IMG/VR virus record: IMGVR_UViG_3300005337_000441
Location: 1 to 64,000 of that record
Length of the DNA: 64,000 bases
Reading direction: 5' to 3' (one strand)
The translations under genes were made by a program, and so were the position numbers. The notes beneath the pieces are model-generated. The model saw nothing but the letters and a program-made list of their open reading frames with translations, did not search any database and was not told the DNA's origin. This document shows positions 2,485-64,000 of this stretch, one piece after another. Each line of letters begins with the position of its first letter. Within the stretch, counting starts at the first letter, position 1.

Positions 2485-2526
2485 GGAGGCATCCTGGCTT
2501 CGGCTGGGATGCCTCCTATGCTTTTT
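2485..2526 (+). terminator. Hairpin terminator followed by TATGC
   Basis: GGAGGCATCCTGGC-TTCG-GCTGGGATGCCTCC-TATGC-TTTTT. Confidence 0.75.
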
Positions 2527-7797: not shown

Positions 7798-7852
7798 TGA
7801 CGGACAAAAGAGCAGGAGGAGCCTTCGGGCTCCTCCTGCTCCTATGCTGTCA
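7798..7852. terminator. Bidirectional hairpin with flanking conserved motif
   Basis: TGACGGACAAAAG-AGCAGGAGGAGCC-TTCG-GGCTCCTCCTGCT-CCTATGCTGTCA between convergent genes. Confidence 0.8.
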
Positions 7853-11776: not shown

Positions 11777-11828
11777 ACAGCATACACCCCTGGGAGGCCC
11801 GAAGGCTCCCAGGGGTGATGTGCCGTCA
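11777..11828. terminator. Bidirectional hairpin with flanking conserved motif
   Basis: ACAGCATA-CACCCCTGGGAG..CGAA..CTCCCAGGGGTG-ATGTGCCGTCA. Confidence 0.8.
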
Positions 11829-16351: not shown

Positions 16352-16407
16352 GCTATCCCAGCGCCCTGCAAAGGGTCGCTGGGATAGCACCTATGCCGTT
16401 TCTTTTT
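16352..16407. terminator. Hairpin at convergent junction with TATGCCGT motif
   Basis: GCTATCCCAGCG...CGCTGGGATAGC-ACCTATGCCGT-TTCTTTTT; second small hairpin TGTGTGTC/GACACACA just upstream. Confidence 0.75.
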
Positions 16408-19983: not shown

Positions 19984-20703
19984 ATGGCTCAAGACTCGAT
20001 TTACTCAACCATGTACGTGGAGCTTGACTGCTTGCTGGACACCCGGCTCGCAACGCTTTACGTCATGGGTGAACAGTACTGTGACAGAGCCTTCAAAGCC
20101 AAGTATCACGAGCGGATCAGCGATCTGCTCCCTGGTATCTCCTACGAAGAGTTCTCTGCTGCATACGCCAAACGCAACAAACAAACACTCAAGCACGCAA
20201 TGATGACGCCTGTGGGTGTCATGATGCGTGACTTTGCACAAAAGACAACGGAGAACACTCTCAATTCTCCGCATCACCACGTTCCCAAGATCGTGCTCAA
20301 CGTCTACCCGTATGAACTGGATGACGATGAGCGGATGGTTTTGGCTCGTACTGTCAGGAGCATCACGCTCAGCCTGGCGGACGTCGAGGTGATTCGTCGT
20401 GAACCCAAAGACGTCACACCGCTGTACGTCAAACACAACCTCACCACCTTGGTGATGTACCGCTACGACGAGTGGCTGGAGTTGCATTGCGCCAACGGAC
20501 TCTTCAAGAAGACGTCTGCGCCCGATGTTGCGCTACTCGCTCCGAGGGTGTACTTCAAAAAGCCTGACGCGACCCCAGCGCCTGGCGAGGATCCGTTTCG
20601 CAGCATGGAAGAGATGGCGTCGCCGCTCATCAACCTGCACCTGCTTCCCGCCAATGTGTTCTCGATCATCGTCAATCCCAGTCAGACAGCAAAACAAGCA
20701 TAG
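19984..20703 (+). CDS. Conserved hypothetical protein, HAD-like N-terminus
   Basis: YVELDCLLDTR resembles a degenerate DxD HAD motif. Confidence 0.55.
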   Translation: MAQDSIYSTMYVELDCLLDTRLATLYVMGEQYCDRAFKAKYHERISDLLPGISYEEFSAAYAKRNKQTLKHAMMTPVGVMMRDFAQKTTENTLNSPHHHVPKIVLNVYPYELDDDERMVLARTVRSITLSLADVEVIRREPKDVTPLYVKHNLTTLVMYRYDEWLELHCANGLFKKTSAPDVALLAPRVYFKKPDATPAPGEDPFRSMEEMASPLINLHLLPANVFSIIVNPSQTAKQA

Positions 20704-20737
20704 TCAGGCGCTGCGTGAGCAGGCCTGACTATGCAGT
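20698..20737. terminator. Bidirectional hairpin with flanking conserved motif
   Basis: GCATAGTCAGGC-GCTGC-GTGA-GCAG-GCCTGACTATGCAGT; upstream stop codon lies inside the stem. Confidence 0.75.
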
Positions 20738-24144: not shown

Positions 24145-24198
24145 TAGAGCACCAGGGCGACTTCGGTCCCCTGGTGCTCTATGCTGTTTTCTTTTTTT
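24145..24198 (+). terminator. Hairpin terminator followed by TATGCTGT
   Basis: TAGAGCACCAGGG..TTCG..CCCTGGTGCTCTATGCTGTTTT. Confidence 0.75.
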
Positions 24199-24245: not shown

Positions 24246-25304
24246 ATGACCATTTCTGCAAAGCGCTTTACGTTCCTCGACCAAGAGACGAACGTTCCGC
24301 TGTCTGACTTCTACGATCCGGGCACCTCGGACATCTTCAACTCGCCTCAGGCGGTGGCCAACGAGATCGATACCGATCTGGCCGAGTTCCTGGAAAAGAG
24401 CTTCGGGCAACCGAACATCAACATCAACCAGCTGACGTCTGACCAGTCGTCCAAACTGCGCGTGGCCAAAGACGCCTTCAGCTCGCTGAAGGACATCGGC
24501 AGCTTCAGCCAAAAGGACATCGACAAGGCGGTGATCGGGATGTTCCCCGGCAACCCCACGGCACAAGCCGCCTACAAGGCGCTGGGCCAGTGTCGCACGT
24601 CGCCTTTCGGCCGTCACAACTACGGTCGTCCTTATGACCCCAAGCTGGACTGCAACAGCCGCAATCGTCGCGGCAGGTACGGGGCATGTAACGCATCGGG
24701 CTTCAACAACATCCTGGACAAGCTGACCAATGGTCAGTACTCCGGCAAGTACAAGGACCTCAACCAATCGCTGGCCAACCTTGTGGCTCTGGCCACACAA
24801 GGCTACAGCATGAACATGTGCGGTGTCTTCGGTGCGCTTTCTGGCGACATGGAAGGCTACGTGAAGTCTCGTGGGGCAGCGATGATGCTGGGTACGCTCG
24901 GCACCACCGGCAACCTGCGCGGCATGTTCGATCTGTCGGGGGCGATGGCTGGTATGGGTCCGAGCGTCATGCGTGAGATTCCCAACGGTATCTCCGGTGT
25001 GCTCAACAACTTCCAGCGTCCTTTCGATGCCCGGGAGTCGGAATACTCCACGCTCAACGAAACCACGTTCGAATCGCTGGAGAACTTCGACGGCAAATGG
25101 AACGTGAGTGATTTCGACGATGTGGTCTCGACCAAGAACTCGACCGTCTACTCGGACGACTTGAGCGACATCATGCGCGGCGACGCCATGAACTACAACG
25201 TTGACGAGGACGATCTGGATAGCATTCCGTTGTCCACCAACAATGACATGCGTTGCGGCATCCTCTCCTCTGCATCGAGCTTTGCAGGTGGTTTCTTCGG
25301 TTGA
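24246..25304 (+). CDS. Putative virion structural protein (352 aa)
   Basis: GGAG RBS before ATG 24246; convergent with gp182-like gene as in phiKZ-like phages. Confidence 0.55.
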   Translation: MTISAKRFTFLDQETNVPLSDFYDPGTSDIFNSPQAVANEIDTDLAEFLEKSFGQPNININQLTSDQSSKLRVAKDAFSSLKDIGSFSQKDIDKAVIGMFPGNPTAQAAYKALGQCRTSPFGRHNYGRPYDPKLDCNSRNRRGRYGACNASGFNNILDKLTNGQYSGKYKDLNQSLANLVALATQGYSMNMCGVFGALSGDMEGYVKSRGAAMMLGTLGTTGNLRGMFDLSGAMAGMGPSVMREIPNGISGVLNNFQRPFDARESEYSTLNETTFESLENFDGKWNVSDFDDVVSTKNSTVYSDDLSDIMRGDAMNYNVDEDDLDSIPLSTNNDMRCGILSSASSFAGGFFG

Positions 25305-25355
25305 CAGCAAAAGACCCCCGGGGACCGCAAGGCCTCCGGGGGTCTATGCCGTCTA
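25302..25355. terminator. Bidirectional hairpin with flanking conserved motif
   Basis: TGACAGCAAAAGACCCCCGG...CCGGGGGTCTATGCCGTCTA; both stop codons abut the element. Confidence 0.8.
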
Positions 25356-27497: not shown

Positions 27498-27519
27498 TCA
27501 GAGTCCTCCAAAAAGAAAA

Positions 27520-27570
27520 CATAGGTAATGAGACCGGAGCCCGAGAGCTCCGGTCTCACTTAGGCTGTCA
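27520..27570 (-). terminator. Hairpin between gp181-like and gp182-like genes, flanked by motif variant and TATG
   Basis: TGAGACCGGAGC/GCTCCGGTCTCA stem; minus strand reads TGACAGCCTA before the stem and TATG-TTTTCTTTTT after it. Confidence 0.65.
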
Positions 27571-35112: not shown

Positions 35113-36735
35113 ATGTCTTTAATTAGCCAAACGCCGTTCAATATCGCACTGCTCATCCCGAGCGATGCAGATGTTGCCGGTATGCGCCCCGTGAAAGTGC
35201 TGGACATCAACGATGGTCTGAGCAAAAACTTTCACCCCGATGGTCTGTTCTCGGTGGAAACGTTCGGCAAAGTGGGTGAGGAAAGGCGCAACCGTCTCTT
35301 CTCCTACATCGACATGCACATCAGCGTCTTCCACCCCGTGGTGTATAAGGCGCTGTTGGACTTGAAGAGCCTGTACGGTGACATCATCGCAGGCACGGGT
35401 TATGCGGTGTTCGACCCCGAAACCAACGATTTCGAAAAGTCCGACGTCACTCAAGGGGACACGGGCTTTGCCTTCTTCGTGAAGCACTTCGAGAAGATCC
35501 AGTTCGAGTCGCGCCCCAGCGCCAAGCGGGAGTTCAACATCGCGCTGGTGAACAAGTACCGCAAGAACTGCCTGATGGACAAACTCGTCGTCATGCCGGC
35601 AGGCCTGCGTGACTACACGGTCGACGAAAACTCCAAGCCGAGTGAAGACGAGATCAATGGCCTGTACCGTCGCGTGCTCAATGTGGCTTCGGTCATCGAG
35701 AACGTCAACGCCAAGAGCAACGTCGAGTACCTGGACTCCACCCGCTACGGCCTGCAACAGCGCGTCAACGAGATCTACGAGTACATCGTGAATCTGCTTG
35801 AAGGCAAGAGCAAGCTCATTCAGGGCAAGTGGGCCTCGCGCAAGATCTTCGACTCCACTCGAAACGTGATTTCCCCGCACGTCTCCAAGACGGACGAGTT
35901 CTTCACGGGTCGCACGGTGTCTTCGAATCAGACCATCGTCGGCTTGTACCAGTACCTGCGCTGCATCATGCCGCTGGCGGTCAAGCACGTGCGCGACACG
36001 TACCTCTCCAAAGTGTTCCTGGGTCCGAACTCACCCGCCGTGCTGGTGAACAAGAAGACCTACAAGAAGGAACTGGTCAACCTCGATCCGCGTTACTACG
36101 ACGAGTGGATGACGTACGAGGGTCTGGAAAAGCTCATGGCCCGGTTCGGTCAGGAAGAGCTCCGTGACGACGTCCTGGAGATCGAGAACTACTACGTGGG
36201 TCTGCTGTACAGGCAAGGTGGTCATGTGCGCTTCGTGCAGGACATCTCCGACGTCCCCATCAACGGCTCGCACGATCCTCGCGAACTCCTCACGCCCATC
36301 ACGTTCTGTGAACTGCTGTACCTGTCGGTGTTTGCTGACGCGGCGAGCATCCCTTGCCTGCTGACACGTTATCCGGTCACGGGGTATGGCTCGATCTATC
36401 CGAGCTACGTCTACCTCAAGACCACGGTGCGTGCTGAACAGGTCAAGGTCCTGGGCGACGACTGGGAAACCGTGATCGGCACAGCCTACGAGTTCCCCAT
36501 CAAAGGCGAACAGTACTTCAACGCGATGAGTCCTTCGACCACTCACGTGGCTCGTCTGGGCGCAGACTACGACGGCGACACTTGCTCGCTGATCTGCCTG
36601 CTCACCGAAGACGCCAAGGTGGAAGTCAAGAAGAAGCTCAACAGCCGCGACTACTATGTGGGTGTCAATGGCAAGATGGCGTTCAGCGCCGGCAACGACA
36701 TCATCGATCTGGTGTTGGCCAACGTCACGAGCTGA
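35113..36735 (+). CDS. rpoC: Virion RNA polymerase beta-prime subunit, catalytic part (phiKZ gp180-like), uninterrupted
   Basis: FHPDGLFSVETFG, IQGKWASRKIF..TRNVI, TRYPV, LGADYDGD catalytic Asp triad. Confidence 0.9.
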   Translation: MSLISQTPFNIALLIPSDADVAGMRPVKVLDINDGLSKNFHPDGLFSVETFGKVGEERRNRLFSYIDMHISVFHPVVYKALLDLKSLYGDIIAGTGYAVFDPETNDFEKSDVTQGDTGFAFFVKHFEKIQFESRPSAKREFNIALVNKYRKNCLMDKLVVMPAGLRDYTVDENSKPSEDEINGLYRRVLNVASVIENVNAKSNVEYLDSTRYGLQQRVNEIYEYIVNLLEGKSKLIQGKWASRKIFDSTRNVISPHVSKTDEFFTGRTVSSNQTIVGLYQYLRCIMPLAVKHVRDTYLSKVFLGPNSPAVLVNKKTYKKELVNLDPRYYDEWMTYEGLEKLMARFGQEELRDDVLEIENYYVGLLYRQGGHVRFVQDISDVPINGSHDPRELLTPITFCELLYLSVFADAASIPCLLTRYPVTGYGSIYPSYVYLKTTVRAEQVKVLGDDWETVIGTAYEFPIKGEQYFNAMSPSTTHVARLGADYDGDTCSLICLLTEDAKVEVKKKLNSRDYYVGVNGKMAFSAGNDIIDLVLANVTS

Positions 36736-36737
36736 TC

Positions 36738-37136
36738 ATGACCAAACTCACGAGCGACTACCGCGAAGGCAAAGGCAGCACGGCCACCTCGGAAGGACAC
36801 GAGTACCAACTCGACATCCTCTTCGAGTTGACGTGGGACCGCAAGCCTACCATCAAGAATGTCTCGGATCTGGACTGGATCCTGGAATACACCGAGATCG
36901 ACGAAGAGCGTGTCAAGAACGCTGACCTCGGAGTTCCCATCCTGATCTACTGGTCCGATGCACTCCAACACTGGGTGACGCTGGACGGGGCACATCGCCT
37001 CACAAAAGCCAAGCGTGAACACAAGCATGGAATCGGTTGTCGTATCGTTGACGAGGACATGCTCGCCAAGGCTCGAATCGATCACCACAAAAAACATGTC
37101 GCCGTGGAGAGCATGCCTCTTTACGCCAAGTGGTAA
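36738..37136 (+). CDS. ParB/Sulfiredoxin-fold small protein with C-terminal AVES-MPLYAKW tail (132 aa)
   Basis: PILIYW....HWVTLDGAHRL matches the ParB N-terminal PI.V...DG.HR motif. Confidence 0.65.
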   Translation: MTKLTSDYREGKGSTATSEGHEYQLDILFELTWDRKPTIKNVSDLDWILEYTEIDEERVKNADLGVPILIYWSDALQHWVTLDGAHRLTKAKREHKHGIGCRIVDEDMLAKARIDHHKKHVAVESMPLYAKW

Positions 37137-37154
37137 CCAACCCATAGGTCTCCG

Positions 37155-40100
37155 ATGCAAATGCATTTCAACGTCTTTTACCACCAGTACGGTATCAGAC
37201 GAATCGATCACCTGCTGACCCCGAAGCTGCTCACGCTTCAGAGTCTGCCCCGAGATGCGATGGTCCACTACCTCAGTGACGACCCGCAAGCTCCTGACCT
37301 GGATGTCTCCCAGCCCTGGCTGGCGACGTCCAACAAGAACGTGGCTGTGGACTATGCGACACAGCTCACTGACCTGCTGGGCAATCCTCACCCTCACATG
37401 GGGAAGACCGTGCGTGACCTCACGCGCGACTTCCATCAAAGCCACCGCAAGTTCAAGTTCACGCCGGACGGGGTGAACAAGATCGGTGACCAGACGGTGC
37501 TGCAAGTCATGAACTACAGCTACCTGGATGCGATGTACACCTACGCACCGGTGCCCCTCACGCCCTGGTACAAGTTCTGGAACAACAACCGCCTGCTGTT
37601 CGGCACCATTGCCAAGATCGGTCAGAGCAAGTCGAAGAACCACTTCGTCTTTCTGAAGGTGCCTCAACAACTGCCGTCCTACCAGCTGCTCAACCTGTAC
37701 GCTGACAAGGAAGTGGCGCGCGTCACACTGCAGGTCTTCAACTCCTACGCGGATCTCATGATCTTGCAGCTGTGGAAATGGCTGGAAGGCGAGGATCGCG
37801 AGGTGACGGTCTTCGGTGCGCTCACGCAAAGCGACCTGGCCAAGGTGAACATCGTCTTCGTCGTGCCGGACGGCCGCTCGATCGTGATGAACCTGGGCTA
37901 CATGGACAGTTGGATCAAGGGTCATGCCAAGCTCGACGCTCAGAAGAGCCAACAGCAGCAAGACCCCCAGGCGCTCAAGAAGCTTTTCTTGAAGTTCCTG
38001 ATCACGGTGACCGCTGCCATCCCGGAAGCCGAAGTCGCTGAGATCCAAGGCGCCCAAACACCGGAAGACAAGCAAGACCAGACCGAGCTTCAAGCGGAGT
38101 CCGACGAGTACCTGCGTGAACATGACGATGACGCCGAAGACAGCATCGACGATCACGAGTTCGAGGACGCCGCGGATCTGATGTCTGGTCTTGGCAAAAA
38201 CACCAAGACGCTTAAAAAGCGTCCGAATGAAGACGTTGCTCAGCGCCTGCAAGCTCTGGACAAGGACATCGACTCCTCGATGTCTTCCGCAACACTGGAC
38301 CTGGGCGAGAAGCTCAAGACGATCGATCAAGACCTGAAGGTGCTCGACCTGCTCAACAGCCGTCGCCTGAAGGATCGTGGCATCCGTCTGGACAAGGAAG
38401 GCGAGCAAGTGCCGCCGGCCGCTCCGGTGGAAGACATTCCGCTGGAAGTACTGCAGCAGCAGATCTACCAGCCTGTCGACTACGAAGAAGCGCTGCTCAA
38501 GCAGATCAATGAATCGGCGGACTTCGGTCTGCTCTCGGCTGCGGACTTCCGCAGGGCTACAGCTGACGTTCAGAAGTACAAGACGTCGCAAGACCCTTAC
38601 GGGTCAGGCCAGCTCACCGTGCAAGCCATGGTGGTCACGCCTGAGGCGATCAAGCTCAATCCGCAAAAGACCGAGATCACGGTGTCGGACAAGGTCGTGG
38701 ACAAGACGATGGCTCAGTCCTCGCTCATGGCCTTCGATCACGACTATATCAAGAACGTCTACAAGAAAGACATGCTGGGCATGATCAATAACCTGCAAAA
38801 AGCAGGCGTGATCGTGCGCAACCATGAAATCGAACTGGACCACAGCGCGCTGGGCACCTACGAGAACCACACGCTCGAACTCAAGCCGATCGATGGCCAG
38901 CCTTCCAAGCTGAGGTTCCGTCTGCCGCAGGTGCAAACCGATGGCACGTTCGTGGCCAATGGCAACAAGTACGTGATGCGCAAGCAGCGCGTGGATGTAC
39001 CCATTCGCAAGACCAACGCCTACACGGTGGCTTTGACGAGCTACTACGGCAAGACCTTCGTCACGGTCAACCAAAAGCAGGCGAACAATTCGCTGGCTTG
39101 GATCGTGAAGGAACTCAACAAAGCGTCGTTCTCGGACAACCACCCTTACATCACGCGCGTGGCGCCTGCCCAGGTCTTCGACAACAACTTCGAAGCCCCG
39201 TGGATCTACAACGCCCTGGCCAACCACTTCAAGTCGGTGACCACGAAGGACTACACGTTGGTCTTTGACCATCAGGAACGTCTGGGTCTCTTTGAAGAAG
39301 CCAGCGAAGGCGGTGAGAAGCTCGGTCCCTACGATCCGGTGCATGCCGCCAAGATCGAAAACGCGGGTGGTAAGGCGTGGAAGTACCGACTCGTCGGCTA
39401 CAGCAACGCAGGCCTGGGCCACATCGTGGTCGACCGTGCCAACCAGTTCTGGCTGCTCGGTCGTGAAGGCGAGCCTCAGCCGCTGGGCGACATCTACCAA
39501 GTGTTGCAACTGGACGCTCACAAGGCTCCGGTGGACTTCACCGAAGTGCGCATCTTCTCCAAGACGGTGCCTGTCGGTGTGGTGCTCGGTTACACCATCG
39601 GTTTCAAGAACCTCTTGAAGCTGCTGGGTGCCAAGCATGAAGTCGTGGAAGGTCGCCGGCTGCCGGACCTCACACCACACCAGTACGTCATTTCCTTCAA
39701 GAACGAGAAGTACATTCTCGATCGCCGTCAACGCACCGCCTCCATGATCCTTTCGGGGTATCTGGACTACGAACGCCAACTGCGCTCGTACGACGCGGCG
39801 GAGTTCGACAAGAAGGACGTCTACCTGAACCTGCTGGCCTCCAAGGGCCTGGGGTCTTTGTACATCCGTGAGCTTGAACTCACCAACCAGCTCTTTGTCG
39901 ACCAGATCACTCTGTCGATCCTGCAGCAAATGAACGAGCCTTCGACGTTCCACGGTCTGCTGATCCGTGCAACGCAGATGCTGGAGACCTACCACCATCC
40001 GGACTCGCAGGACATGAAGTCCATGCGCATCCGCGGCTACGAACGTTTCCCTGGTGCGGTCTACAAAGAACTCACGGCGCAAATCCGTCAGTTCAAGAAC

Positions 40101-41615
40101 CGCAACATCGCGGGCAAGTCCCGTGTGGAAATGAGTCCGTACCAGATCTGGCAGACGGTGATGAAGGATCCGGCCATCAAGCTGGTGGAAGACATCAACC
40201 CGATCCAGAATCTGAAGGAAGCCGAAATCATCACGTACGTGGGTACGGGTGGCCGCTCCAAGGACTCAATCAACAAAGAAAACCGTGCGTTCCATCCGAA
40301 CGACATGGGCATCGTCTCTGAAGCCACGGTGGACAGCTCGGACGTGGGTATCAATGCCTACCTCTCTGCGAACCCCAACTTTGCCGACATGCGCGGCATC
40401 GCGCTGCCGGACAAGAACTTCAACCCTGCGAACCTGATCTCCACCAGTGCACTGCTGGCGGTGGGCGCCAACCACGACGACCCCAAGCGCGTGAACTTCG
40501 TGTCGATCCAGCAATCGCACACCATCGCCGCTCACGGCTATCACCAGCCCGTCGTGCGCACCGGTTACGAATACGTGATCGGTAACCGTACCACGGACAT
40601 GTTTGCCTACTTCGCCAAGGACGACGGCAAGGTGGTGAGCGTGGACGACAACGGCGTGATCATCGAGTACGCGGACGGCACCAAGAAGGGTGTGACGCTC
40701 GGCCGTGTCTACGGCAAGGCCGAAGGCAGCGTCTATCCGCACGACATCGTCTGTCCCCTGAAGGTGAACGCGAAGTTCAAGAAGGGTGACACGATCGCTT
40801 ACAACACGGGTTTCTTCGAGCCAGACTTCCTCGACCGCAGCAAGGTCGTGATGAAGAACTCCATGGTCGTGAAGGTGGCACTCCTGGAGTCCAGCAACAC
40901 GCACGAAGACGCCTCCGCCATCAGCAAGAGCGTGGGCCAACGCTTGAGTGCTCGTACCACCAAGGTGCGTTCGTTCACCGTGGACTTCAAGCAACGTCTG
41001 AACGATGTCGTGAAGGTCGGCGATTCCGTCGGTCCCAAGGACATCCTGATGGTGATCGAAGACGAGATCACGTCCAACACCAACATCTTCGACCAGCAGT
41101 CGCTGGAAGTGCTGAAGAACTTCTCCAAGCAAGCCCCCAAGGCCAACTACCTCGGGACGATCGACAAGATCGAGGTGTTCTACCACGGCGCCAAGCAAGA
41201 CATGAGCGCTTCGCTCAAGATGCTGGCTGACCGCAGTGATCGCCAGCTCGGTGAGGTTTGCCGCGCTTCCAACAAGCCGGTCATCACCGGTCAAGTCAAC
41301 GACGACTACCGGGTCTCCGGTGTGCCGCTCGCACTCGACAAGGCCGAAGTGAAGATCTACATCACGGTGACCACCACCGCCGGTGTGGGTGACAAGGGCG
41401 TGTTCGCATCACAAATGAAGAGCGTGATCGGTGAGGTGATGGACTACAAGGTTCACACCGAAGAAGGTCAAGAGGTTGAAGCGATGTTCGGTTACCGCTC
41501 CATCGCGGCCCGTATCGTGGAAAGCCCTGTGATCATCGGCACCACCACGACTCTGTTGAAAGTGATCGCCAAAAAGGCGGTCGACATCTACCGAGGATCT
41601 GTGCAAAAAGCCTAG
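37155..41615 (+). CDS. rpoB: Virion RNA polymerase beta subunit, large part (phiKZ gp178-like, 1486 aa)
   Basis: YVMRKQRVDVPIRK, TYVGTGGRS, DDPKRVNFVSIQQSH, GVGDKGVFASQMKSVI beta-family motifs. Confidence 0.9.
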   Translation: MQMHFNVFYHQYGIRRIDHLLTPKLLTLQSLPRDAMVHYLSDDPQAPDLDVSQPWLATSNKNVAVDYATQLTDLLGNPHPHMGKTVRDLTRDFHQSHRKFKFTPDGVNKIGDQTVLQVMNYSYLDAMYTYAPVPLTPWYKFWNNNRLLFGTIAKIGQSKSKNHFVFLKVPQQLPSYQLLNLYADKEVARVTLQVFNSYADLMILQLWKWLEGEDREVTVFGALTQSDLAKVNIVFVVPDGRSIVMNLGYMDSWIKGHAKLDAQKSQQQQDPQALKKLFLKFLITVTAAIPEAEVAEIQGAQTPEDKQDQTELQAESDEYLREHDDDAEDSIDDHEFEDAADLMSGLGKNTKTLKKRPNEDVAQRLQALDKDIDSSMSSATLDLGEKLKTIDQDLKVLDLLNSRRLKDRGIRLDKEGEQVPPAAPVEDIPLEVLQQQIYQPVDYEEALLKQINESADFGLLSAADFRRATADVQKYKTSQDPYGSGQLTVQAMVVTPEAIKLNPQKTEITVSDKVVDKTMAQSSLMAFDHDYIKNVYKKDMLGMINNLQKAGVIVRNHEIELDHSALGTYENHTLELKPIDGQPSKLRFRLPQVQTDGTFVANGNKYVMRKQRVDVPIRKTNAYTVALTSYYGKTFVTVNQKQANNSLAWIVKELNKASFSDNHPYITRVAPAQVFDNNFEAPWIYNALANHFKSVTTKDYTLVFDHQERLGLFEEASEGGEKLGPYDPVHAAKIENAGGKAWKYRLVGYSNAGLGHIVVDRANQFWLLGREGEPQPLGDIYQVLQLDAHKAPVDFTEVRIFSKTVPVGVVLGYTIGFKNLLKLLGAKHEVVEGRRLPDLTPHQYVISFKNEKYILDRRQRTASMILSGYLDYERQLRSYDAAEFDKKDVYLNLLASKGLGSLYIRELELTNQLFVDQITLSILQQMNEPSTFHGLLIRATQMLETYHHPDSQDMKSMRIRGYERFPGAVYKELTAQIRQFKNRNIAGKSRVEMSPYQIWQTVMKDPAIKLVEDINPIQNLKEAEIITYVGTGGRSKDSINKENRAFHPNDMGIVSEATVDSSDVGINAYLSANPNFADMRGIALPDKNFNPANLISTSALLAVGANHDDPKRVNFVSIQQSHTIAAHGYHQPVVRTGYEYVIGNRTTDMFAYFAKDDGKVVSVDDNGVIIEYADGTKKGVTLGRVYGKAEGSVYPHDIVCPLKVNAKFKKGDTIAYNTGFFEPDFLDRSKVVMKNSMVVKVALLESSNTHEDASAISKSVGQRLSARTTKVRSFTVDFKQRLNDVVKVGDSVGPKDILMVIEDEITSNTNIFDQQSLEVLKNFSKQAPKANYLGTIDKIEVFYHGAKQDMSASLKMLADRSDRQLGEVCRASNKPVITGQVNDDYRVSGVPLALDKAEVKIYITVTTTAGVGDKGVFASQMKSVIGEVMDYKVHTEEGQEVEAMFGYRSIAARIVESPVIIGTTTTLLKVIAKKAVDIYRGSVQKA

Positions 41616-45624: not shown

Positions 45625-46143
45625 ATGAAGGACATCAAACGGATGTACAAAGACAAGGACGCCTTGGTGAACCTGGTGTACAACCACATGAAAGTGGCTG
45701 GTCCCAAGTCCTTGACGATCCGAACCGATATCCCTCTCGTGAACCAACACCAGCTGTGGAACATCCAGGAGTTCGCTGCGGTCAGAGACTACTACGCGCA
45801 GCTGTACACCGAACTCCAGTCCTACATCGAGAGCGCCTATGGGCGAGGGATCAATCCGGTGACGGATTATCTGTACAAGTCGTTCCTGGACTCTCTGGCG
45901 TCTTCCGACCTCCAGAAGAGCGTGCACCAGCTCCATGCGTTTTACAAACGCACCATGACCGAGCAGAACGCGATCGTGATCGACACGGCCGTGGAGAGGA
46001 ATACCGCCTCAACGCCCACGGACTATTCGGTCGCCGTGAAGCTCTTCGTGCGCATGGTCAGGCTCAGCTCCACCGAGCCTTTGTTGGTAGTACCTTTGGC
46101 CCAGTACCGCTTCAATCTCGAAATCAAGCATCAAAGCAAATAG
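45625..46143 (+). CDS. Hypothetical protein (~172 aa)
   Basis: Starts 2 nt after upstream stop; followed by hairpin AGCAAATAGTCGGGG/CCTCGGCTATTTGCT. Confidence 0.6.
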   Translation: MKDIKRMYKDKDALVNLVYNHMKVAGPKSLTIRTDIPLVNQHQLWNIQEFAAVRDYYAQLYTELQSYIESAYGRGINPVTDYLYKSFLDSLASSDLQKSVHQLHAFYKRTMTEQNAIVIDTAVERNTASTPTDYSVAVKLFVRMVRLSSTEPLLVVPLAQYRFNLEIKHQSK

Positions 46144-46242
46144 TCGGGGACAACCTCGGCTATTTGCTCTTTTGTGCTGTCTCCAATTTTTACTGGAAGT
46201 TACTAATTCCTGTGGTTTGGGTCTGTACACCCAGGAGAACAT

Positions 46243-51734: not shown

Positions 51735-51823
51735 TTCGGCGCCCGCCACCAACGCTACTCCTCAGAGCCCCGGGACGTCCCGGGGCTCTGTTGTGCCCTT
51801 TCCTTTTTCACCGAGAACAATAC

Positions 51824-52246: not shown

Positions 52247-52250
52247 AACC

Positions 52251-52547
52251 ATGAGCACCCTGTATCCACTTCACAAACTGCTTGAAGCAGCAGACCGCAT
52301 TGAGGTTGTGGGATGTCTCTGTGAGCTCGTATCTTTTCACGATCTTGACTCTACCAGTGAACCGGTAATGCTGAATCAAGTTTTCGGGGATACTACTCAT
52401 TACTTTGATGCCGCTCAGCTGGTGGACATCACCAAACCCATCATGGTGGATGAATTGCATCCACCACCTGGTCACCAAGGGCGCCAGCTCAAGGAGATCA
52501 AACTCTTCATGTTCCGACCAATGACGCTCGACGACGTGACGGCATAA
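52251..52547 (+). CDS. Small paralogue-family protein (98 aa)
   Basis: MSTLYPLHKLLEAADRIEV...DTTHYFDAAQLV...KLFMFRPMT. Confidence 0.65.
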   Translation: MSTLYPLHKLLEAADRIEVVGCLCELVSFHDLDSTSEPVMLNQVFGDTTHYFDAAQLVDITKPIMVDELHPPPGHQGRQLKEIKLFMFRPMTLDDVTA

Positions 52548-52600
52548 AAAGACCACCAGGGCCGAAGCCCCGGTGGTCTCTTGCCGTTGTGGCTTTTTTT
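52537..52600. terminator. Bidirectional hairpin with flanking conserved motif
   Basis: TGACGGCATAAAAAGACCACC...CGAA...GGTGGTCTCTTGCCGT. Confidence 0.8.
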
Positions 52601-52603
52601 GGC

Positions 52604-53473: not shown

Positions 53474-53504
53474 GTGTGATTCTCCTTGTGTTCAGCTTGT
53501 GGGT

Positions 53505-55577: not shown

Positions 55578-55625
55578 GGATTACCTCGAAGAGAAGAGAA
55601 GATTCACTAGACTGGAGTTTTAAAA

Positions 55626-56630: not shown

Positions 56631-56644
56631 GGTCTGATCCGATC

Positions 56645-59254: not shown

Positions 59255-59262
59255 GAGCTTCG

Positions 59263-60930
59263 ATGCCAACAAATTCTCCTGTGGTCGGCACCGATGGCCA
59301 ACCACCGATCTATCAGCCCGACGCGCGTTGGTGCTGGTGGTCGCTCGAAGAGATCTATCGAGGTCAACAAGGCGCCAACAAGTACATCCCGAAGGTCAAA
59401 GACTACGTGATGGACACCGACACGTACACCGCGTACCGTGTCGAGGCGCTGGACCCCGTCACCTATATCCCCACGCTCAAGGAAGTGCGTCCGGCCAACA
59501 TGGACTTCGTGTTCACGGAAACCGATGTGCTCTTCGGCGTGGGGCCGGGTACGCAAGCGGACACGTACCGCGTGTACCTGGATACGTCCGACATGCCCTA
59601 TTCGCTCGCCGTCGATGCACGGCTGCGCGTGGGTGGCACCATGTGCGCCTATGCCAAGATCTTCCGTGGCGCTGCCATCGACGGTCAAGGCGAGGTCATC
59701 TCCAAGGTCTACAACTCCAACGGTCAGTTCGTCTCCGAGAACGTGCCGCTGGAAGTGGTGGCTCTGGACTCGCACACCAACTACTCCATCAAGGCAGTAC
59801 CGCCCTGCAAGACCACCACGCAAATGCCCAACGGGGAGATCGTTACGGCGGTCTTCTACGCGAGCAACGGCACGGTGGTCTCCAAACGTCAGCTGCTCGT
59901 TGAGAACTCCAGCTTCATCCGCAGCGTGGACGCCTCGGCCAAGTACATCACGGGCATCCGTCTGGAGTCGCCCTTCATGTCGCCCACGATCGACAAGCAG
60001 ATCGACTATCCGCTGAACGTGCCCATGAACGCCCTGAACCTCATGGGCGTGGTCATGTACTCGGACGGCTCGGAGCTCAAGCTCCCGGTGGACGGCACGA
60101 AGTTCACGATGTTCGGTCTGGACCAGTACGTGTCCACGATCATCGGCCAGAAGCTCAACCTGGTGTTGCGCTATGCGATGGCTCCCAACGAGACGTCGTA
60201 CTCCGGCGTGAACAACGATGGCAATCACTACGTGACGGAGTCCTACGACCTCGTGACGGTGAACCCGAACAACAGCTACTCCGTGAAGCTCTTCGGCTAC
60301 CCGTACTGGGTGGACGCCTTCACCGGCTACCAGATGCGCTGGTGGATGATGAACCTGGACCGCAATGTCTGGTTCGACGTCACCGGCAAGGTGAGCTTCA
60401 ACGCCAACACGGGTCCCTACGATCCGAAGGGCTACGGCATCTTGCAACGCAAGAGCGTGAGCGTGAATCTGAAGGACGTCTCCGGCGTCTTCAAGAACTT
60501 CATCCACACGCAGCTCGTGGAGATCGTGCTCAACGGTCCCCCGAACGGTGTCGCCACGCCGTGGACGGTCTCTCACGAGTCCAACGCCACGCGTCCGCTC
60601 TACGGTCAAGGCCTCTTCGCCAAGATGAAGTCGGCCAACACCGTGAACCTGAGCTCGGACATCACCGACTACAACGAGTGGAAGACGCGCGTCTACCAGA
60701 ACACGTTCCCGTTGGTCAATCCGGCGAGCGAGCTGGCAGCGCCCACCCCCACACACTTCATCGTGGACTACCTGGGTCTGCAAACCACGTACGGCGTCGA
60801 GGACTGGAACCAAGACATCAACGTGGGCAGCAACGTCCAAGGGGCCAAGACGTTGTCCATCCGCTTCATCAAGCGCGTGGGCAACACCGATCAACAGCTC
60901 GCCGTGGCTGCGATGATCATCAACCCGTAA
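59263..60930 (+). CDS. Virion structural/baseplate protein (phiKZ gp26-like, 555 aa)
   Basis: W...EIY.G......YIPKV.DYV.D, SKRQLLVEN..F, KYITGI.L.SPF motifs; synteny. Confidence 0.75.
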   Translation: MPTNSPVVGTDGQPPIYQPDARWCWWSLEEIYRGQQGANKYIPKVKDYVMDTDTYTAYRVEALDPVTYIPTLKEVRPANMDFVFTETDVLFGVGPGTQADTYRVYLDTSDMPYSLAVDARLRVGGTMCAYAKIFRGAAIDGQGEVISKVYNSNGQFVSENVPLEVVALDSHTNYSIKAVPPCKTTTQMPNGEIVTAVFYASNGTVVSKRQLLVENSSFIRSVDASAKYITGIRLESPFMSPTIDKQIDYPLNVPMNALNLMGVVMYSDGSELKLPVDGTKFTMFGLDQYVSTIIGQKLNLVLRYAMAPNETSYSGVNNDGNHYVTESYDLVTVNPNNSYSVKLFGYPYWVDAFTGYQMRWWMMNLDRNVWFDVTGKVSFNANTGPYDPKGYGILQRKSVSVNLKDVSGVFKNFIHTQLVEIVLNGPPNGVATPWTVSHESNATRPLYGQGLFAKMKSANTVNLSSDITDYNEWKTRVYQNTFPLVNPASELAAPTPTHFIVDYLGLQTTYGVEDWNQDINVGSNVQGAKTLSIRFIKRVGNTDQQLAVAAMIINP

Positions 60931-60937
60931 ACCAACC

Positions 60938-60987
60938 AGCAGGTGGAGTGGGCTCTCGCAAGGGGGCCTGCTCCACCTGTATTCCGT
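60938..60987 (+). terminator. Hairpin after gp26-like gene with TATTCCGT motif variant
   Basis: CAGGTGGAG..GGCTC...GGGCC..CTCCACCTG-TATTCCGT. Confidence 0.65.
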
Positions 60988-61001
60988 CTCAAAAAAGATA
61001 C

Positions 61002-61015
61002 GGTCACATATACTT
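61002..61015 (+). promoter_or_regulatory. Candidate phage promoter motif GGTCACATATACTT
   Basis: Identical to 46752..46765; preceded by AAAAAA tract. Confidence 0.6.
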
Positions 61016-61057
61016 CATTTGACCACATAGCGTCAAACATCAAAACCGAGAGGAAAC

Positions 61058-61654
61058 ATGTCGCTACAACACTCGTTCCTGAATGTCTATTTCAGGAATA
61101 TGCATTTCAGCCCGCCCGTCGAGCAGTTCGTTCAAATCCTGCCGGTCGGCGAACTCTGGCAAGACGTGAGCAGCAGCTTGCTCAACGGCTTCATCAACAT
61201 CTTCTGCGAAGGCTCTGGTCCGATCGCAGCCGCCCTGGTGCACTACGACAAGGGCTCCGACGAACCCCTGCAGAACATCCAGAACTTCCAGTACGCTGAA
61301 GGGCTGGGTCCGCTACGCACCTTCGAGGTCTTCACTCGCAAGGACACGGTGCTCAACCTGATGCGCACGACCGACCTGCATTTGCGCAGCAGCACTCCAC
61401 TCAGCATCTTCGAGGACGGGGTGATGGTGCTGTACAAGTCCACAGGTACGGTGGACTGGGGTCCGATCTACTGGTTCTTCTGGTACGACCCGGATACCAC
61501 GAAGTGCGTCATCGGCCGCTTCACGTCGGAAGCGCCTGAGCCGAACATCCTGGCGGACTTCTACGCCTTCGCCGACGACATCTCCATTCGACACCAGGAA
61601 GAAGGGGCATCCCGCTTGCCTCAATCTCTCTTCCGTGGATGGATCGCGTACTAA
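61058..61654 (+). CDS. Hypothetical protein (198 aa)
   Basis: GAGG RBS. Confidence 0.65.
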   Translation: MSLQHSFLNVYFRNMHFSPPVEQFVQILPVGELWQDVSSSLLNGFINIFCEGSGPIAAALVHYDKGSDEPLQNIQNFQYAEGLGPLRTFEVFTRKDTVLNLMRTTDLHLRSSTPLSIFEDGVMVLYKSTGTVDWGPIYWFFWYDPDTTKCVIGRFTSEAPEPNILADFYAFADDISIRHQEEGASRLPQSLFRGWIAY

Positions 61655-61680
61655 ACCCCGTTCATGCAAAAGGAAACCAC

Positions 61681-62577
61681 ATGAATCTGATCGAACGACT
61701 TTCCCGCAGCCTCAATATGTCCAGCAAGCCGGACCTTCAGTCTGGCAACAAAACGGACTCGCCTTTCATCCAGGACATGCTCCTGGCTGGCGACGTCCAG
61801 ACCAACGTGAAGTCTCAGTTCGCAACCATCGTGGTCTACAACCCGCTGAACATCGAAGCCATCCTGGCGGCTTCGGAGATCAAGCGGCACTTCGATCACG
61901 TGCAGGTGTTGGCTGCTGACCAACTCATCCCGTCCGAAGACGAGATCGTGCAAGAAAAGACCACCTTCGTGTGGATTGGCGTTACGCTGGGAAGCGATCG
62001 TCTGCGCGCCATGCGCATCCACAAGGCCTCACACCGCCTGTACAGCAGCCGCGACGGTGTCGTCGCCGATGACACTGGCTACCGTCCCACGCTCATCGAG
62101 CGCGTTTGCGTGGACATGGGAATTCACGTCACGGCACGTCGCATCAAGCTGGGTTACCTGGCTTCGCAGTTCCATGAGCCTACCGGTCCCAACGAGACCA
62201 AGGCCGACAAGCTCGCTGCTCTGGTGGAAACCTGGGCAGAGCTGCGTGCTGCACTGGTGCACCTGAACGGCGACAACTACATGAGCCGTGTCAACATGTC
62301 GGCACAGACCATCTATCTGGAAGACATGGCGCGCGCCAAGCGCAAGATCAGCGGCAACTACCGCTTGATGATGAGTAAGGACGGTCACAAGGCGGTGCGC
62401 ACCCTCGTCACCCACTTCAACGACCACCTGTTCATCTTGGCTCTGCGCCTGATCGGCCTGAGCCACACGGCGTTCATGAACCACTGGGTCAGCAGCAATG
62501 GCACGCTGCTGTACACCAACATCTACCGCCCCCATCTGCACGAGGAAGAGAAGATCTCTCCCATCTTGCTGAGCTGA
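61681..62577 (+). CDS. Hypothetical protein, possible degenerate DHH-fold (298 aa)
   Basis: AAGGA RBS; IVVYNPLNIEAILAASEI resembles DHH motif I (Y-H..D.DG..AA) without the acidic/His residues. Confidence 0.55.
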   Translation: MNLIERLSRSLNMSSKPDLQSGNKTDSPFIQDMLLAGDVQTNVKSQFATIVVYNPLNIEAILAASEIKRHFDHVQVLAADQLIPSEDEIVQEKTTFVWIGVTLGSDRLRAMRIHKASHRLYSSRDGVVADDTGYRPTLIERVCVDMGIHVTARRIKLGYLASQFHEPTGPNETKADKLAALVETWAELRAALVHLNGDNYMSRVNMSAQTIYLEDMARAKRKISGNYRLMMSKDGHKAVRTLVTHFNDHLFILALRLIGLSHTAFMNHWVSSNGTLLYTNIYRPHLHEEEKISPILLS

Positions 62578-62625
62578 CGGCATACGCCCCCAGGAGCTTC
62601 ACGGCTCCTGGGGGCTCTATGCTGT
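62575..62625. terminator. Bidirectional hairpin with flanking conserved motif (cleanest copy)
   Basis: TGACGGCATA-C-GCCCCCAGGAGC-TTCACG-GCTCCTGGGGGC-TC-TATGCTGT. Confidence 0.85.
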
Positions 62626-62633
62626 CTCTTTTT

Positions 62634-64000
62634 TCAGTGGTACGTGTAGCCGTACGGATTGCGGTTCCCGAAACCCGAGAAGTTACGGGCTTGGTTGTTA
62701 AGGCGTCGCTGAAGCTTACGGCCTTCGCGCAGGTTGTTGATGAGCTCATCCACCGAGAGGTGTTGGTTGTCACTCTCGTTCAGACGCATCACGGCGCCGC
62801 GCAAGCGGTTCTCCAACATGTCGATGGCGAAGTCATCGCGTTCGTTACGAATCTGCTCAGTGAGGACTTCCACCTGTTGGCGGTAGTACTCCTGTTCCAT
62901 CCGTTTGTATTTGGCAGTGGGGTCGTTTTCAACCTGGTGTTGTTTGTTGTTCACCAAGATGTCACGAGCCTGAATACCGTAGTAGTGCAGATTGCGACCA
63001 GACAGCAAGATCCAAGCGCTCAAAAGCCAGGCGATGACCATGTCGTCATGCTTGCCTGCGGCGTGGTCGATACGCCCGTTGCGCACTTCCAGTCCCAGGA
63101 TCTGTTCAATGACCTTCTTGTCTTTGACCAGCTTGCCTGTGAGCTTGGCAGAATTTTGCAGTGTAGTGCTGTAGAGCTCCGTACGGCTTGTCGCACCGGT
63201 TGCCGAGGTGGCAAAGCCAAAGTGCTTCTTGAAGCGCACGTAGACATCTTCGCGGCGCATGGCCAGCGACACTTGAATCTCTTTCCAAGCCTCCGGATAG
63301 AGTTCCGGTTCTTGGACGATCTTGTTGTAGATCCGCTTGAACGGATCGATGCCACGCTTGGGCAGCATCAGCAGGAGGTAGTCCAGGATCGTGGCGCCAG
63401 AGGAGCGACGCTCCACGACCAGGGTGACGCTGGGGTACTTCTCCAACCAGTCACACAGCCACTCGGCGAACGTGATCAGGTTGGTTTCGTTGTAGTTGCC
63501 TGCAGCGGCCACAGAGCCGTCCTTGACCGCACGCAGCACCAAACCGATGTCGTCCTTGCCCACGGCGTCTGATGTGTCCACAGCCAGCGTATGGGCCTCT
63601 TGCATCTTGATGGCGATCTCACGCTCAGCGTAGTACCAGCGCGTGGTGTAGGCGTGAGGACGAGAGATGACGGTCTGGTAGTCGTCCGCTTGAGAGTTGC
63701 GGATGTCGTTGTTGAGCTCGGTCGTCAGCGGCGAGCTGATGCTACCAGACGTCCAGTGGTTCAGGTAGTCACGCTCAGCGGCTTCACCGGCAGCGTTGGT
63801 TGTCTTGATCTGTTCACGCAGCCATTCGTCGGTGTAACCCAGTTGACGATGGTTGAACGTGCAGTTCACTACGAGCTTGTCACCCGAAGACGCCTTGCGC
63901 ACGATCTCGCAGAGCTCTTCTTCGTTCTGTGCGTCCATGAACATCTCGGACCAAATGGCGGCTTCCATGAGGAGCTTGTGGGCGTAGGCACCGTCACGGT
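62634..64000 (-). CDS. terL: Terminase large subunit, C-terminal part (phiKZ gp25-like; starts beyond window end)
   Basis: Frame open to the window edge; FNHRQLG.TDEWL, nuclease motifs VDTSDAVGKD, LVVERRSSG, HDDMVIAWLL. Confidence 0.9.
   Translation of the reverse strand, partial: RDGAYAHKLLMEAAIWSEMFMDAQNEEELCEIVRKASSGDKLVVNCTFNHRQLGYTDEWLREQIKTTNAAGEAAERDYLNHWTSGSISSPLTTELNNDIRNSQADDYQTVISRPHAYTTRWYYAEREIAIKMQEAHTLAVDTSDAVGKDDIGLVLRAVKDGSVAAAGNYNETNLITFAEWLCDWLEKYPSVTLVVERRSSGATILDYLLLMLPKRGIDPFKRIYNKIVQEPELYPEAWKEIQVSLAMRREDVYVRFKKHFGFATSATGATSRTELYSTTLQNSAKLTGKLVKDKKVIEQILGLEVRNGRIDHAAGKHDDMVIAWLLSAWILLSGRNLHYYGIQARDILVNNKQHQVENDPTAKYKRMEQEYYRQQVEVLTEQIRNERDDFAIDMLENRLRGAVMRLNESDNQHLSVDELINNLREGRKLQRRLNNQARNFSGFGNRNPYGYTYH

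What the first reader, a model, noticed from the sequence alone, without database searches (positions are those of the whole stretch)
62575..62625. Conserved ACRGCAWA-[variable hairpin]-TATGCYGT element at all seven convergent gene junctions
Seen: stems differ completely, but the flanks recur on one or both sides at every +/- junction: 7798-7852, 11777-11828, 16352-16399, 20698-20737, 25302-25355, 52537-52577 and 62575-62625. One-sided or variant copies also follow hairpins at tandem junctions (2517 TATGC, 24180 TATGCTGT, 27561 TAGGCTGTCA, 60980 TATTCCGT). The motif often overlaps or abuts the stop codon (TGACGGCATA, TGACAGC), and several copies lack the U-tract of a normal intrinsic terminator. 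Established: phiKZ-like phages transcribe with their own RNAPs, and the phiKZ late promoter consensus is just TATG. Inference: this is either a sequence-specific terminator/RNA-processing signal for the phage RNAP or a terminating factor, or back-to-back late promoters firing antisense RNAs into each neighbour's 3' end.
Basis: partly seen in the sequence, partly recalled or inferred. Interest (0 to 1): 0.65.

Follow-up and report, generated by a model that had tools for sequence, protein, structure and literature searches.

The report
phiKZ-type hairpin-plus-box transcription terminators
The recurring flanks are real and match the "hairpin + TTATKYYGT" terminator already mapped by RNA 3' ends in phage phiKZ, found here in a distant, GC-rich, uncultured relative; so it is a known kind of signal whose mechanism is still open.

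Summary
TATGCYGT occurs 29 times in the 215.8-kb genome against about 3.4 expected. 28 of the 29 copies sit directly 3' of a GC-rich hairpin.

A looser box, T[ATG]T[GTA]YYGT, follows 34 of 78 strong post-gene hairpins against 0.4 expected. De novo motif discovery on the hairpin tails recovers TTWTKCYKTYW.

The box follows the direction of transcription:
- Tandem junctions: 19/55 on the transcribed side, 3/55 on the other.
- Convergent junctions: both sides (15/23 and 13/23).
- The 19 divergent regions: no enrichment.

The ACRGCAWA flank is simply the same box on the opposite strand.

This matches the phiKZ terminator consensus (hairpin + YTTATKYYGT; Putzeys 2024). I combined the published phiKZ 3'-end positions with the phiKZ sequence. 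At 18 box-type terminators the last RNA nucleotide was never placed beyond box position 6: it was at position 5-6 in 11 and at position 3 in 4.

The box recurs after unrelated stems at the orthologous tail-tube junction in Burkholderia, Ralstonia and Erwinia phages and in metagenomic kin. It is absent in the SPN3US-like and Vibrio relatives sampled and in a non-phiKZ control.

Verdict: uni- and bidirectional terminators of the phiKZ type. The back-to-back-promoter reading is not supported. How the box replaces a U-tract is unknown.

The parts
62586..62615 (.). Hairpin of the bidirectional terminator between genes 61681-62577 (+) and 62634-64820 (-).
   Evidence: The 62575-62625 stretch folds at -39.1 kcal/mol, z -7.9. 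Hairpin coordinates.
62618..62625 (+). Exact box TATGCTGT, 2 nt after the stem, followed by a T-rich run. By analogy with phiKZ, the + strand RNA should end inside it.
   Evidence: phiKZ 3' ends.
62577..62584 (-). Exact box TATGCCGT on the - strand, seen as ACGGCATA on the + strand. It overlaps the TGA stop of the + gene by one base.
7810..7841 (.). Hairpin with a UUCG loop at convergent junction 7793/7850.
   Evidence: -39.4 kcal/mol, z -7.3.
7843..7850 (+). Exact box TATGCTGT. The following CA completes the TCA that is the stop codon of the converging - gene.
7798..7809 (-). Weak variant box on the - strand (TTTTGTCCGTCA).
   Evidence: PWM score 11.4.
11785..11817 (.). Hairpin at convergent junction 11772/11826.
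   Evidence: -35.4 kcal/mol.
11777..11784 (-). Exact box TATGCTGT on the - strand.
11819..11826 (+). One-mismatch box TGTGCCGT, followed by CA, which completes the stop of the converging gene.
16352..16388 (.). Hairpin at convergent junction 16304/16420. A second, weaker hairpin lies at 16326-16350.
   Evidence: -32.8 kcal/mol.
16392..16399 (+). Exact box TATGCCGT followed by a T-run. There is no box on the - side of this hairpin.
20698..20734 (.). Hairpin at convergent junction 20703/20741. Its outer stem is formed by GCATA pairing with TATGC.
   Evidence: -31 kcal/mol, z -7.8.
20730..20737 (+). One-mismatch box TATGCAGT.
20686..20693 (-). One-mismatch box TTTGCTGT on the - strand.
25312..25345 (.). 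Hairpin at convergent junction 25304/25353. The 51-nt cassette is 98% identical to one at 148305-148355, although the flanking genes are unrelated.
25345..25352 (+). Exact box TATGCCGT. It abuts the CTA that is the stop codon of the converging - gene.
25304..25311 (-). One-mismatch box TTTGCTGT on the - strand. It overlaps the TGA stop of the + gene.
52547..52582 (.). Hairpin with a UUCG loop, downstream of the tail-tube gene (52604-53473, -), at convergent junction 52547/52604.
   Evidence: -38.7 kcal/mol; Phage_TTP_14.
52539..52546 (-). Exact box TATGCCGT on the - strand. The equivalent box is kept at the orthologous junction in FLC9, RSF1 (as TTTGCCGT), Simmy50 and many metagenomic kin.
52580..52587 (+). 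Weak variant box CTTGCCGT.
2485..2524 (+). Tandem-junction terminator: hairpin 2485-2516, then TATGCTTT and a T-run.
24150..24187 (+). Tandem-junction terminator: hairpin 24150-24176, then exact box 24180-24187 and a T-run.
27516..27568 (-). Terminator after the 2492-aa - strand gene. Hairpin 27527-27560, TATGTTTT plus a T-run on the transcribed - side (27516-27523), and TAGGCTGT on the + side (27561-27568).
46135..46180 (+). Tandem-junction terminator: hairpin 46135-46168, then one-mismatch box TGTGCTGT at 46173-46180.
60939..60987 (+). Tandem-junction terminator: hairpin 60939-60980, then TATTCCGT. About 20 nt further on is the CATATAC promoter-like motif at 61007.
35113..41615 (+). Context: two genes for phiKZ-type multisubunit RNA polymerase subunits (35113-36735 and 37155-41615). 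These are the enzymes presumed to read the terminators.
   Evidence: PHROG 2986 and 3148, E 1.7e-182 and 0. Position matches the annotated RNAP genes of RSF1.

Best explanation
These are transcription terminators of the phiKZ type. Each is a GC-rich stem-loop followed within 0-3 nt by a conserved box, (T)TATGCYGT(C), in place of a U-tract.

At tandem junctions the box sits only on the transcribed side. At convergent junctions one hairpin serves both directions and carries a box on each strand. That produces the apparent ACRGCAWA ... TATGCYGT symmetry and lets the flanks extend the stem in the released RNA.

By analogy with phiKZ, transcripts should end inside the box. There the last mapped RNA nucleotide was most often at box position 5-6, just before the G-T at positions 7-8.

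My inferred mechanism has three steps:
1. The hairpin forms behind the polymerase.
2. The weak U-A-U segment next to the stem allows the hairpin to invade the RNA:DNA hybrid.
3. The GCY|GT part acts as a sequence-specific pause or release signal for the phage's own multisubunit RNA polymerases. This would be a pyrimidine at -1 and G at +1, as in the general pause rule for multisubunit polymerases.

The identity as a terminator is well supported. The role of the box is inference.
For: Shown here:
- 29 exact boxes against about 3.4 expected; 28 follow a hairpin.
- 34 of 78 strong post-gene hairpins carry the box against 0.4 expected, binomial p about 2e-56.
- De novo EM on the hairpin tails gives TTWTKCYKTYW.
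- Tandem junctions: 19/55 on the transcribed side against 3/55 on the opposite side, Fisher p = 2e-4. Convergent junctions: 15/23 and 13/23.
- By position, 26 of the 29 exact copies have the strand expected of a terminator at their junction class.
- Position 9 is C in 26 of 34 sites, although the search pattern did not require it.
- The phage encodes phiKZ-type RNA polymerase subunits, a homologue of phiKZ GP123, and a phiKZ-type tail sheath.

From papers:
- 61 phiKZ terminators defined by ONT-cappable-seq 3' ends share a hairpin plus YTTATKYYGT, and six bidirectional terminator regions lie between convergent genes (PMC10914365).
- The main terminator motif of 201phi2-1 is said to resemble it strongly. 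Eight 201phi2-1 terminators, chosen to carry different motifs, terminated strongly in uninfected host cells (PMC11512511).
- phiKZ infection is resistant to rifampicin, an inhibitor of the host RNA polymerase (PMC4666361).

Combining the published phiKZ 3'-end positions with the genome: at 18 box-type terminators the last RNA nucleotide is at box position 5-6 in 11, position 3 in 4, and never beyond position 6.

Conservation:
- The box follows hairpins in FLC9, RSF1, phiKZ and Erwinia Simmy50.
- It is kept at the orthologous tail-tube junction after unrelated stems.
- It recurs in many metagenomic relatives with locus GC of 0.35-0.62.
Against: - There are no RNA data for this phage.
- The published 3' ends cannot separate termination from processing or exonuclease trimming back to the hairpin. 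The method resolves ends only to about 2 nt.
- Only 34 of 78 strong hairpins carry the box. 7 have plain U-tracts and 37 have degenerate or other tails, so the box is not obligatory.
- Several relatives (Salmonella SPFM2, Vibrio phage 5, and a number of metagenomic kin) use ordinary U-tracts although they have homologous polymerases.
- The 201phi2-1 terminators worked in uninfected cells, presumably with host polymerase. A phage-polymerase-specific reading of the box is therefore not required.
Confidence: 0.82

Rival explanations
1. RNA processing or stability element. Transcripts read through, an endonuclease cuts in or after the single-stranded box, and the hairpin then blocks 3' exonucleases. 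The mapped 3' ends would be processed ends rather than termination sites.
For: - The phiKZ 3' ends are spread over box positions 1-6, as trimming would give.
- ONT-cappable-seq 3' ends do not show how an end was made.
- At bidirectional sites the flanks pair and would give a blunt, protected 3' end.
Against: - In phiKZ, termination sites were called only where read coverage fell by at least 20% across the site.
- Cloned 201phi2-1 terminators strongly reduced expression of a downstream reporter in uninfected cells.
- A processing signal has no evident reason to be needed on both strands at convergent junctions, where read-through would be antisense RNA.
Confidence: 0.1
2. Late promoters. The TATG in the box is the late-promoter core of the non-virion RNA polymerase (G = +1). 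The boxes would start transcripts towards the next gene at tandem junctions, and antisense RNAs at convergent ones.
For: - TATG with G as the start site is the phiKZ late-promoter consensus and is necessary for transcription in vitro (PMC4666361).
- At tandem junctions the box lies upstream of the next gene.
Against: - 0 exact boxes, and no enrichment of loose boxes, in the 19 divergent regions.
- Boxes occur on both sides of convergent junctions, where no co-oriented gene follows.
- The conserved part extends well beyond TATG (CYGTC), whereas no conservation downstream of TATG was found in phiKZ late promoters.
- A2 and G4 of the box are often replaced, yet every TATG position matters for promoter activity.
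- In the phiKZ start-site rows read, no mapped start coincides with a terminator's own TATG. Where a late start follows a terminator it uses a second TATG downstream, as with T046 and P054.
Confidence: 0.05
3. A dispersed palindromic repeat (REP- or MITE-like), or a DNA-level protein-binding site unrelated to transcription.
For: - It is an inverted-repeat element found in intergenic DNA.
- One 51-nt cassette is duplicated at 98% identity between unrelated genes.
Against: - An all-against-all comparison of 69 hairpins found one near-identical pair and one small three-member family; other matches were 16-17 nt. The stems are otherwise unrelated.
- The box follows the direction of transcription at tandem junctions, which a DNA-level palindrome would not.
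- No Rfam family matches.
Confidence: 0.03

Closest known systems
Conserved phiKZ terminator motif (Putzeys et al. 2024, PMC10914365), and the 201phi2-1 terminator motif A that its authors say strongly resembles it (PMC11512511)
   Same: - A GC-rich stem-loop directly followed by (Y)TTATKYYGT.
- The same ACRRCATA ... TTATGYYGT symmetry at convergent junctions.
- Terminator followed by the next promoter at tandem junctions.
- The host genome is a phiKZ-like phage with its own multisubunit RNA polymerases.
   Different: - In phiKZ the stem itself is conserved (CCYCCCC / GGGRRGG). Here the stems vary widely.
- Box positions 5-6 are more often C here (TATGCCGT) than in AT-rich phiKZ (TATGTTGT).
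- A C at position 9 is added.
- No RNA ends have been mapped for this phage.
Canonical bacterial intrinsic (rho-independent) terminators, including bidirectional ones at convergent genes
   Same: - A stable GC-rich hairpin.
- In phiKZ the mapped RNA ends lie within a few nucleotides after the stem.
- One hairpin can serve both strands.
- The 201phi2-1 terminators that were tested worked in uninfected bacteria.
   Different: There is no U-tract next to the stem: 3-4 T in 9 nt, and the consensus scan does not detect these sites. A specific, conserved, fairly G+C-rich sequence takes its place.
Consensus elemental pause of multisubunit RNA polymerases (G at -10, pyrimidine at -1, G at +1). This is from my own knowledge, not from a tool.
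   Same: In phiKZ the commonest 3' ends are a pyrimidine followed by G (after Y6 before G7, or after T3 before G4). The G-rich 3' arm of the stem lies about 10 nt upstream.
   Different: It was described for bacterial polymerases and as a pause, not as release. It has never been tested for the phage enzymes, and the register is only approximately known.
[quoted passage not shown]
   Same: The same four letters begin the box, and both are read by the same family of polymerases.
   Different: The position and orientation logic is that of a terminator. Conservation extends downstream of TATG. The TATG letters themselves are partly replaceable in the box.
T7 RNA polymerase class II (sequence-specific) termination signal. 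This is from my own knowledge.
   Same: It shows the idea of a short specific sequence, rather than a U-tract alone, halting a phage polymerase.
   Different: It involves a single-subunit polymerase, needs no hairpin, and has a different sequence. It is an analogy only.

Membership tests
phiKZ-type conserved terminator (hairpin + YTTATKYYGT) | GC-rich stem-loop immediately followed by the TTATKYYGT box. | tested here: met
   De novo tail motif TTWTKCYKTYW. 34 of 78 hairpins carry the box against 0.4 expected. Box offset from the stem end is mostly -1 to +1 nt.
phiKZ-type conserved terminator (hairpin + YTTATKYYGT) | Lies downstream of genes on the transcribed side, and is paired on both strands between convergent genes. 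| tested here: met
   Tandem 19/55 against 3/55; convergent 15/23 and 13/23; no enrichment in divergent regions.
phiKZ-type conserved terminator (hairpin + YTTATKYYGT) | RNA 3' ends accumulate at the site. | not testable with these tools
This was shown only for phiKZ, by combining published positions with the sequence.
phiKZ-type conserved terminator (hairpin + YTTATKYYGT) | The genome encodes phiKZ-type multisubunit RNA polymerases. | tested here: met
   PHROG RNA polymerase families at 35113-36735 and 37155-41615. GP123 homologue at 207859-209484, 28% identity, E 4e-59.
phiKZ-type conserved terminator (hairpin + YTTATKYYGT) | Conserved stem sequence CCYCCCC ... GGGRRGG, as in phiKZ. | tested here: not met
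   Stems are diverse. There is only one near-identical pair and one small family. UUCG loops are common. Some high-GC metagenomic kin do have the phiKZ-like stem.
Canonical intrinsic terminator | U-tract directly after the stem. | tested here: not met
   Mostly 3-4 T in the first 9 nt at box sites. These junction hairpins are not reported by the consensus scan.
phiKZ late promoter (TATG, G = +1) | Located upstream of a co-oriented gene, including in divergent regions; primary 5' ends at the G. | tested here: not met
   No enrichment in divergent regions, and present at convergent junctions. In the phiKZ start-site rows read, starts are not at the terminators' own TATG. 5' ends in this phage are not testable.
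REP/MITE-like dispersed palindromic repeat | Copies share full-length sequence. | tested here: not met
   All-against-all blastn of 69 hairpins with flanks.

The most novel reading that the evidence does not exclude
The box is a sequence-specific termination or pause signal read as DNA by the phage polymerase core. The non-template-strand pocket of the beta-like subunit, which recognises TATG at late promoters, would also capture the TATG of the box during elongation. It would hold the enzyme a few nucleotides past the hairpin so that release can occur without a U-tract. One recognition pocket would then serve both to start and to stop transcription in this phage family.
Probability: 0.12. Interest if true: 0.8.

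Novelty: new member of a known kind. Interest (0 to 1): 0.42.

Why it matters
phiKZ-like nucleus-forming phages transcribe with two very divergent multisubunit RNA polymerases, and how these enzymes terminate has not been studied. The papers that reported the motif simply filed these sites as intrinsic terminators.

This work shows three things:
- The post-hairpin box survives across relatives with locus GC of 0.35-0.62 while the stems are replaced.
- It takes the place of the U-tract.
- In phiKZ the mapped RNA ends were placed inside it, never beyond position 6.

Together these point to a specific signal that can be tested directly with purified phiKZ polymerase. In practice the box gives a cheap way to annotate transcription-unit ends and orientation in uncultured jumbo-phage genomes.

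Tried and rejected
I did not try another route.
- Close relatives for compensatory-change analysis: none in the phage collection by DNA. None in viral contigs with two proteins. The metagenome scan gave 36 relatives at 47-71% tail-tube identity. These are too distant for base-by-base covariation but good for comparing the orthologous junction.
- Correlating the box with the GP123 TATG-binding pocket: F151, K158 and H331 are kept, and H185 and Y406 stay mostly aromatic, in every homologue. That includes Salmonella SPFM2 and Vibrio phage 5, whose sampled regions lack the box. The comparison is therefore uninformative.
- Pfam finds nothing in the RNA polymerase subunits. PHROGs does.
- Rfam: no family matches in the window.
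- Supplementary tables for the journal versions of the two transcriptome papers are not held. The preprint's table was used instead.
- The first Markov simulation timed out and was rewritten.
- My first PWM partly merges the box with plain T-tracts, so the final statistics use an explicit pattern.
- REP-like repeat and late-promoter readings were considered and rejected; see the rival explanations.

Full report
**What the window is.**
The window is the first 64 kb of a single 215,768-bp contig with 57% G+C. The contig is a JGI metagenome record, Ga0070682_100000020.

It is an uncultured phiKZ-like jumbo phage:
- A virion protein matches Burkholderia phage FLC9, Ralstonia RP12/RSF1/RSL2, Xanthomonas phages and 288 phiKZ-like records at 21-42% identity.
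- The tail tube and phiKZ-type sheath are recognised by Pfam.
- Two genes at 35113-41615 and one at 207859-209484 are phiKZ-type RNA polymerase subunits.
- Sigma-70-like promoters are fewer than in shuffles: 3 against 7.1, and 0 against 6.5.

**Checking the observation.**
A simple codon-usage gene caller gave 252 genes covering 92% of the genome.

All seven carry hairpins of -31 to -39 kcal/mol, with z-scores of -5.7 to -7.9.

ACRGCATA is the reverse complement of TATGCYGT, so the two flanks are one motif on the two strands. At bidirectional sites the flanks can therefore pair and lengthen the stem.

TATGCYGT occurs 19 times on the + strand and 10 times on the - strand. A third-order Markov model expects 1.8 and 1.6. 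28 of the 29 copies directly follow a GC-rich hairpin.

**Unbiased motif and direction.**
I took the best hairpin after every gene end. I then ran a small EM motif search on the tails of the 78 hairpins with dG of -14 or lower. It returned TTWTKCYKTYW.

I then used the explicit pattern T[ATG]T[GTA]YYGT:
- 34 of 78 tails carry the box against 0.4 expected (p about 2e-56).
- At tandem junctions the transcribed side has it in 19 of 55 cases, and the opposite side in 3 of 55 (p = 2e-4).
- At convergent junctions both sides have it (15/23 and 13/23).
- The 19 divergent regions show 3 hits against 2.7 expected.

By position, 26 of the 29 exact copies have the strand expected of a terminator at their junction class. 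None is in a divergent region.

Position 9 is C in 26 of 34 sites, which gives TATGCYGTC. Box sites mostly have only 3-4 T in the 9 nt after the stem. UUCG is the commonest loop. A consensus terminator scan does not report these junction hairpins.

**What it matches.**
Putzeys et al. mapped 133 phiKZ termination sites by ONT-cappable-seq. They found that 61 share 5'-BCCYCCCCHWWDGGGRRGGBYTTATKYYGT-3', a hairpin followed by TTATKYYGT. Six bidirectional terminator regions lie between convergent genes (PMC10914365).

The main 201phi2-1 terminator motif is said to resemble it strongly. Eight cloned 201phi2-1 terminators, chosen to carry different motifs, terminated strongly in uninfected cells (PMC11512511).

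TATGCCGT fits TATKYYGT exactly. The phiKZ table shows the same ACRRCATA ... TTATGYYGT pairs.

**Where the RNA ends in phiKZ.**
I fetched phiKZ 50,001-200,000 and placed the published 3'-end coordinates on it.

I numbered the box T1 A2 T3 G4 Y5 Y6 G7 T8. At 18 box-type terminators the last RNA nucleotide is:
- at position 5-6 in 11,
- at position 3 in 4,
- at position 1 in 2,
- at position 4 in 1,
- never beyond position 6.

In the first 43 sites examined, 42 of the terminal bases are pyrimidines. Ends followed by A are ambiguous because of the poly(A) tailing used in the method.

The conserved G7-T8 therefore lie just downstream of the commonest end. This suggests that the box acts partly through the polymerase and the DNA ahead of it, not only through the RNA:DNA hybrid. 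That last step is my inference.

**Promoter alternative.**
phiKZ late promoters are TATG with G at +1 (PMC4666361). The beta-like core subunit GP123 binds these four non-template bases (PMC12809450).

In the part of the phiKZ start-site table that I read, no start coincides with a terminator's own TATG. Starts that follow a terminator lie further downstream. For example, terminator T046 ends at 101370 and late start P054 is at a second TATG at 101390.

Together with the lack of enrichment in divergent regions, this rejects the back-to-back-promoter reading.

A separate motif, CATATAC, occurs 19 times on the + strand and never on the - strand. 18 of the copies are intergenic, and all lie 24-376 nt upstream of the next + strand gene. 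It looks like the counterpart of the phiKZ early-promoter core TATATTAC.

**Conservation.**
The box follows hairpins in FLC9, RSF1, phiKZ and Erwinia Simmy50. It does not do so in the regions sampled from Salmonella SPFM2 (plain U-tracts), Vibrio phage 5, or the non-phiKZ jumbo phage RSL1.

At the orthologous junction after the tail-tube gene, four phages keep the same layout: this phage, FLC9, RSF1 and Simmy50. The layout is an A-tract, then the stem, then the box, and the stems are unrelated. A reverse-complement box precedes the stem in all but RSF1. RSF1's box is a T-variant, TTTGCCGT.

Among 36 metagenomic relatives with locus GC of 0.28-0.62, many keep TTATGYYGT-like tails at that junction. 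Others have U-tracts. Overall, 19 box-bearing tails were found against 3.4 expected.

**Rivals and limits.**
Processing rather than termination cannot be excluded from 3' ends alone. A REP-like repeat is unlikely because the stems share no sequence apart from one duplicated cassette and one small family.

The GP123 pocket residues are broadly kept even in relatives whose sampled regions lack the box, so that comparison says nothing either way.

There are no RNA data for this phage.

**Verdict.**
The element is real and strongly non-random. It belongs to a terminator type already described in phiKZ and, by its authors' account, in 201phi2-1.

New here:
- Its extension to a distant, GC-rich, uncultured lineage.
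- The direction and divergent-region tests.
- The placing of phiKZ RNA ends within the box.
- The comparison of the orthologous junction across relatives.

Why a specific box replaces the U-tract remains open and is testable.

Noticed in passing
window 14209, 46757, 61007 (16 more copies elsewhere in the genome): CATATAC occurs 19 times on the + strand and never on the - strand. 18 copies are intergenic, and all lie 24-376 nt upstream of the next + strand gene. The wider consensus is about ggTCACATATACTtt, and it often sits about 20-25 nt after a terminator box. It is probably the early (virion polymerase) promoter, the counterpart of the phiKZ TATATTAC core.
   Followed up: partly
window 25304-25354 and genome 148305-148355: A 51-nt terminator cassette (both boxes plus the hairpin) is 98% identical at two loci. 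The flanking genes show no protein similarity, so the terminator module itself was copied or converted.
   Followed up: partly
genome 124494-124511 (outside the window): The box is tandemly duplicated on the - strand: TATGCCGTC twice in a row after one hairpin.
   Followed up: no
genome 71471-71478 (outside the window): This is the only exact box without a preceding hairpin. It lies 17 nt upstream of the start called at 71496.
   Followed up: no
genome 78821-78870 and 113862-113897 (outside the window): Hairpins at junctions that I called tandem carry the box on both strands. This hints at antisense transcription or at small unannotated - strand genes.
   Followed up: no
window 7000-26500 and 44500-64000: Sigma-70-like promoter matches are fewer than in shuffles: 3 against 7.1, and 0 against 6.5. 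This fits transcription that does not rely on the host polymerase.
   Followed up: no
The two tail types might go with different temporal classes or different polymerases.
   Followed up: no
whole genome: There is strong strand bias: 199 tandem junctions on the + strand against 14 on the - strand, with 19 convergent and 19 divergent junctions.
   Followed up: no
L017-L053: The genome is metagenome contig Ga0070682_100000020. 36 uncultured relatives have 47-71% tail-tube identity and locus GC of 0.28-0.62. They include contigs of 202-259 kb (L025, L044, L051).
   Followed up: partly
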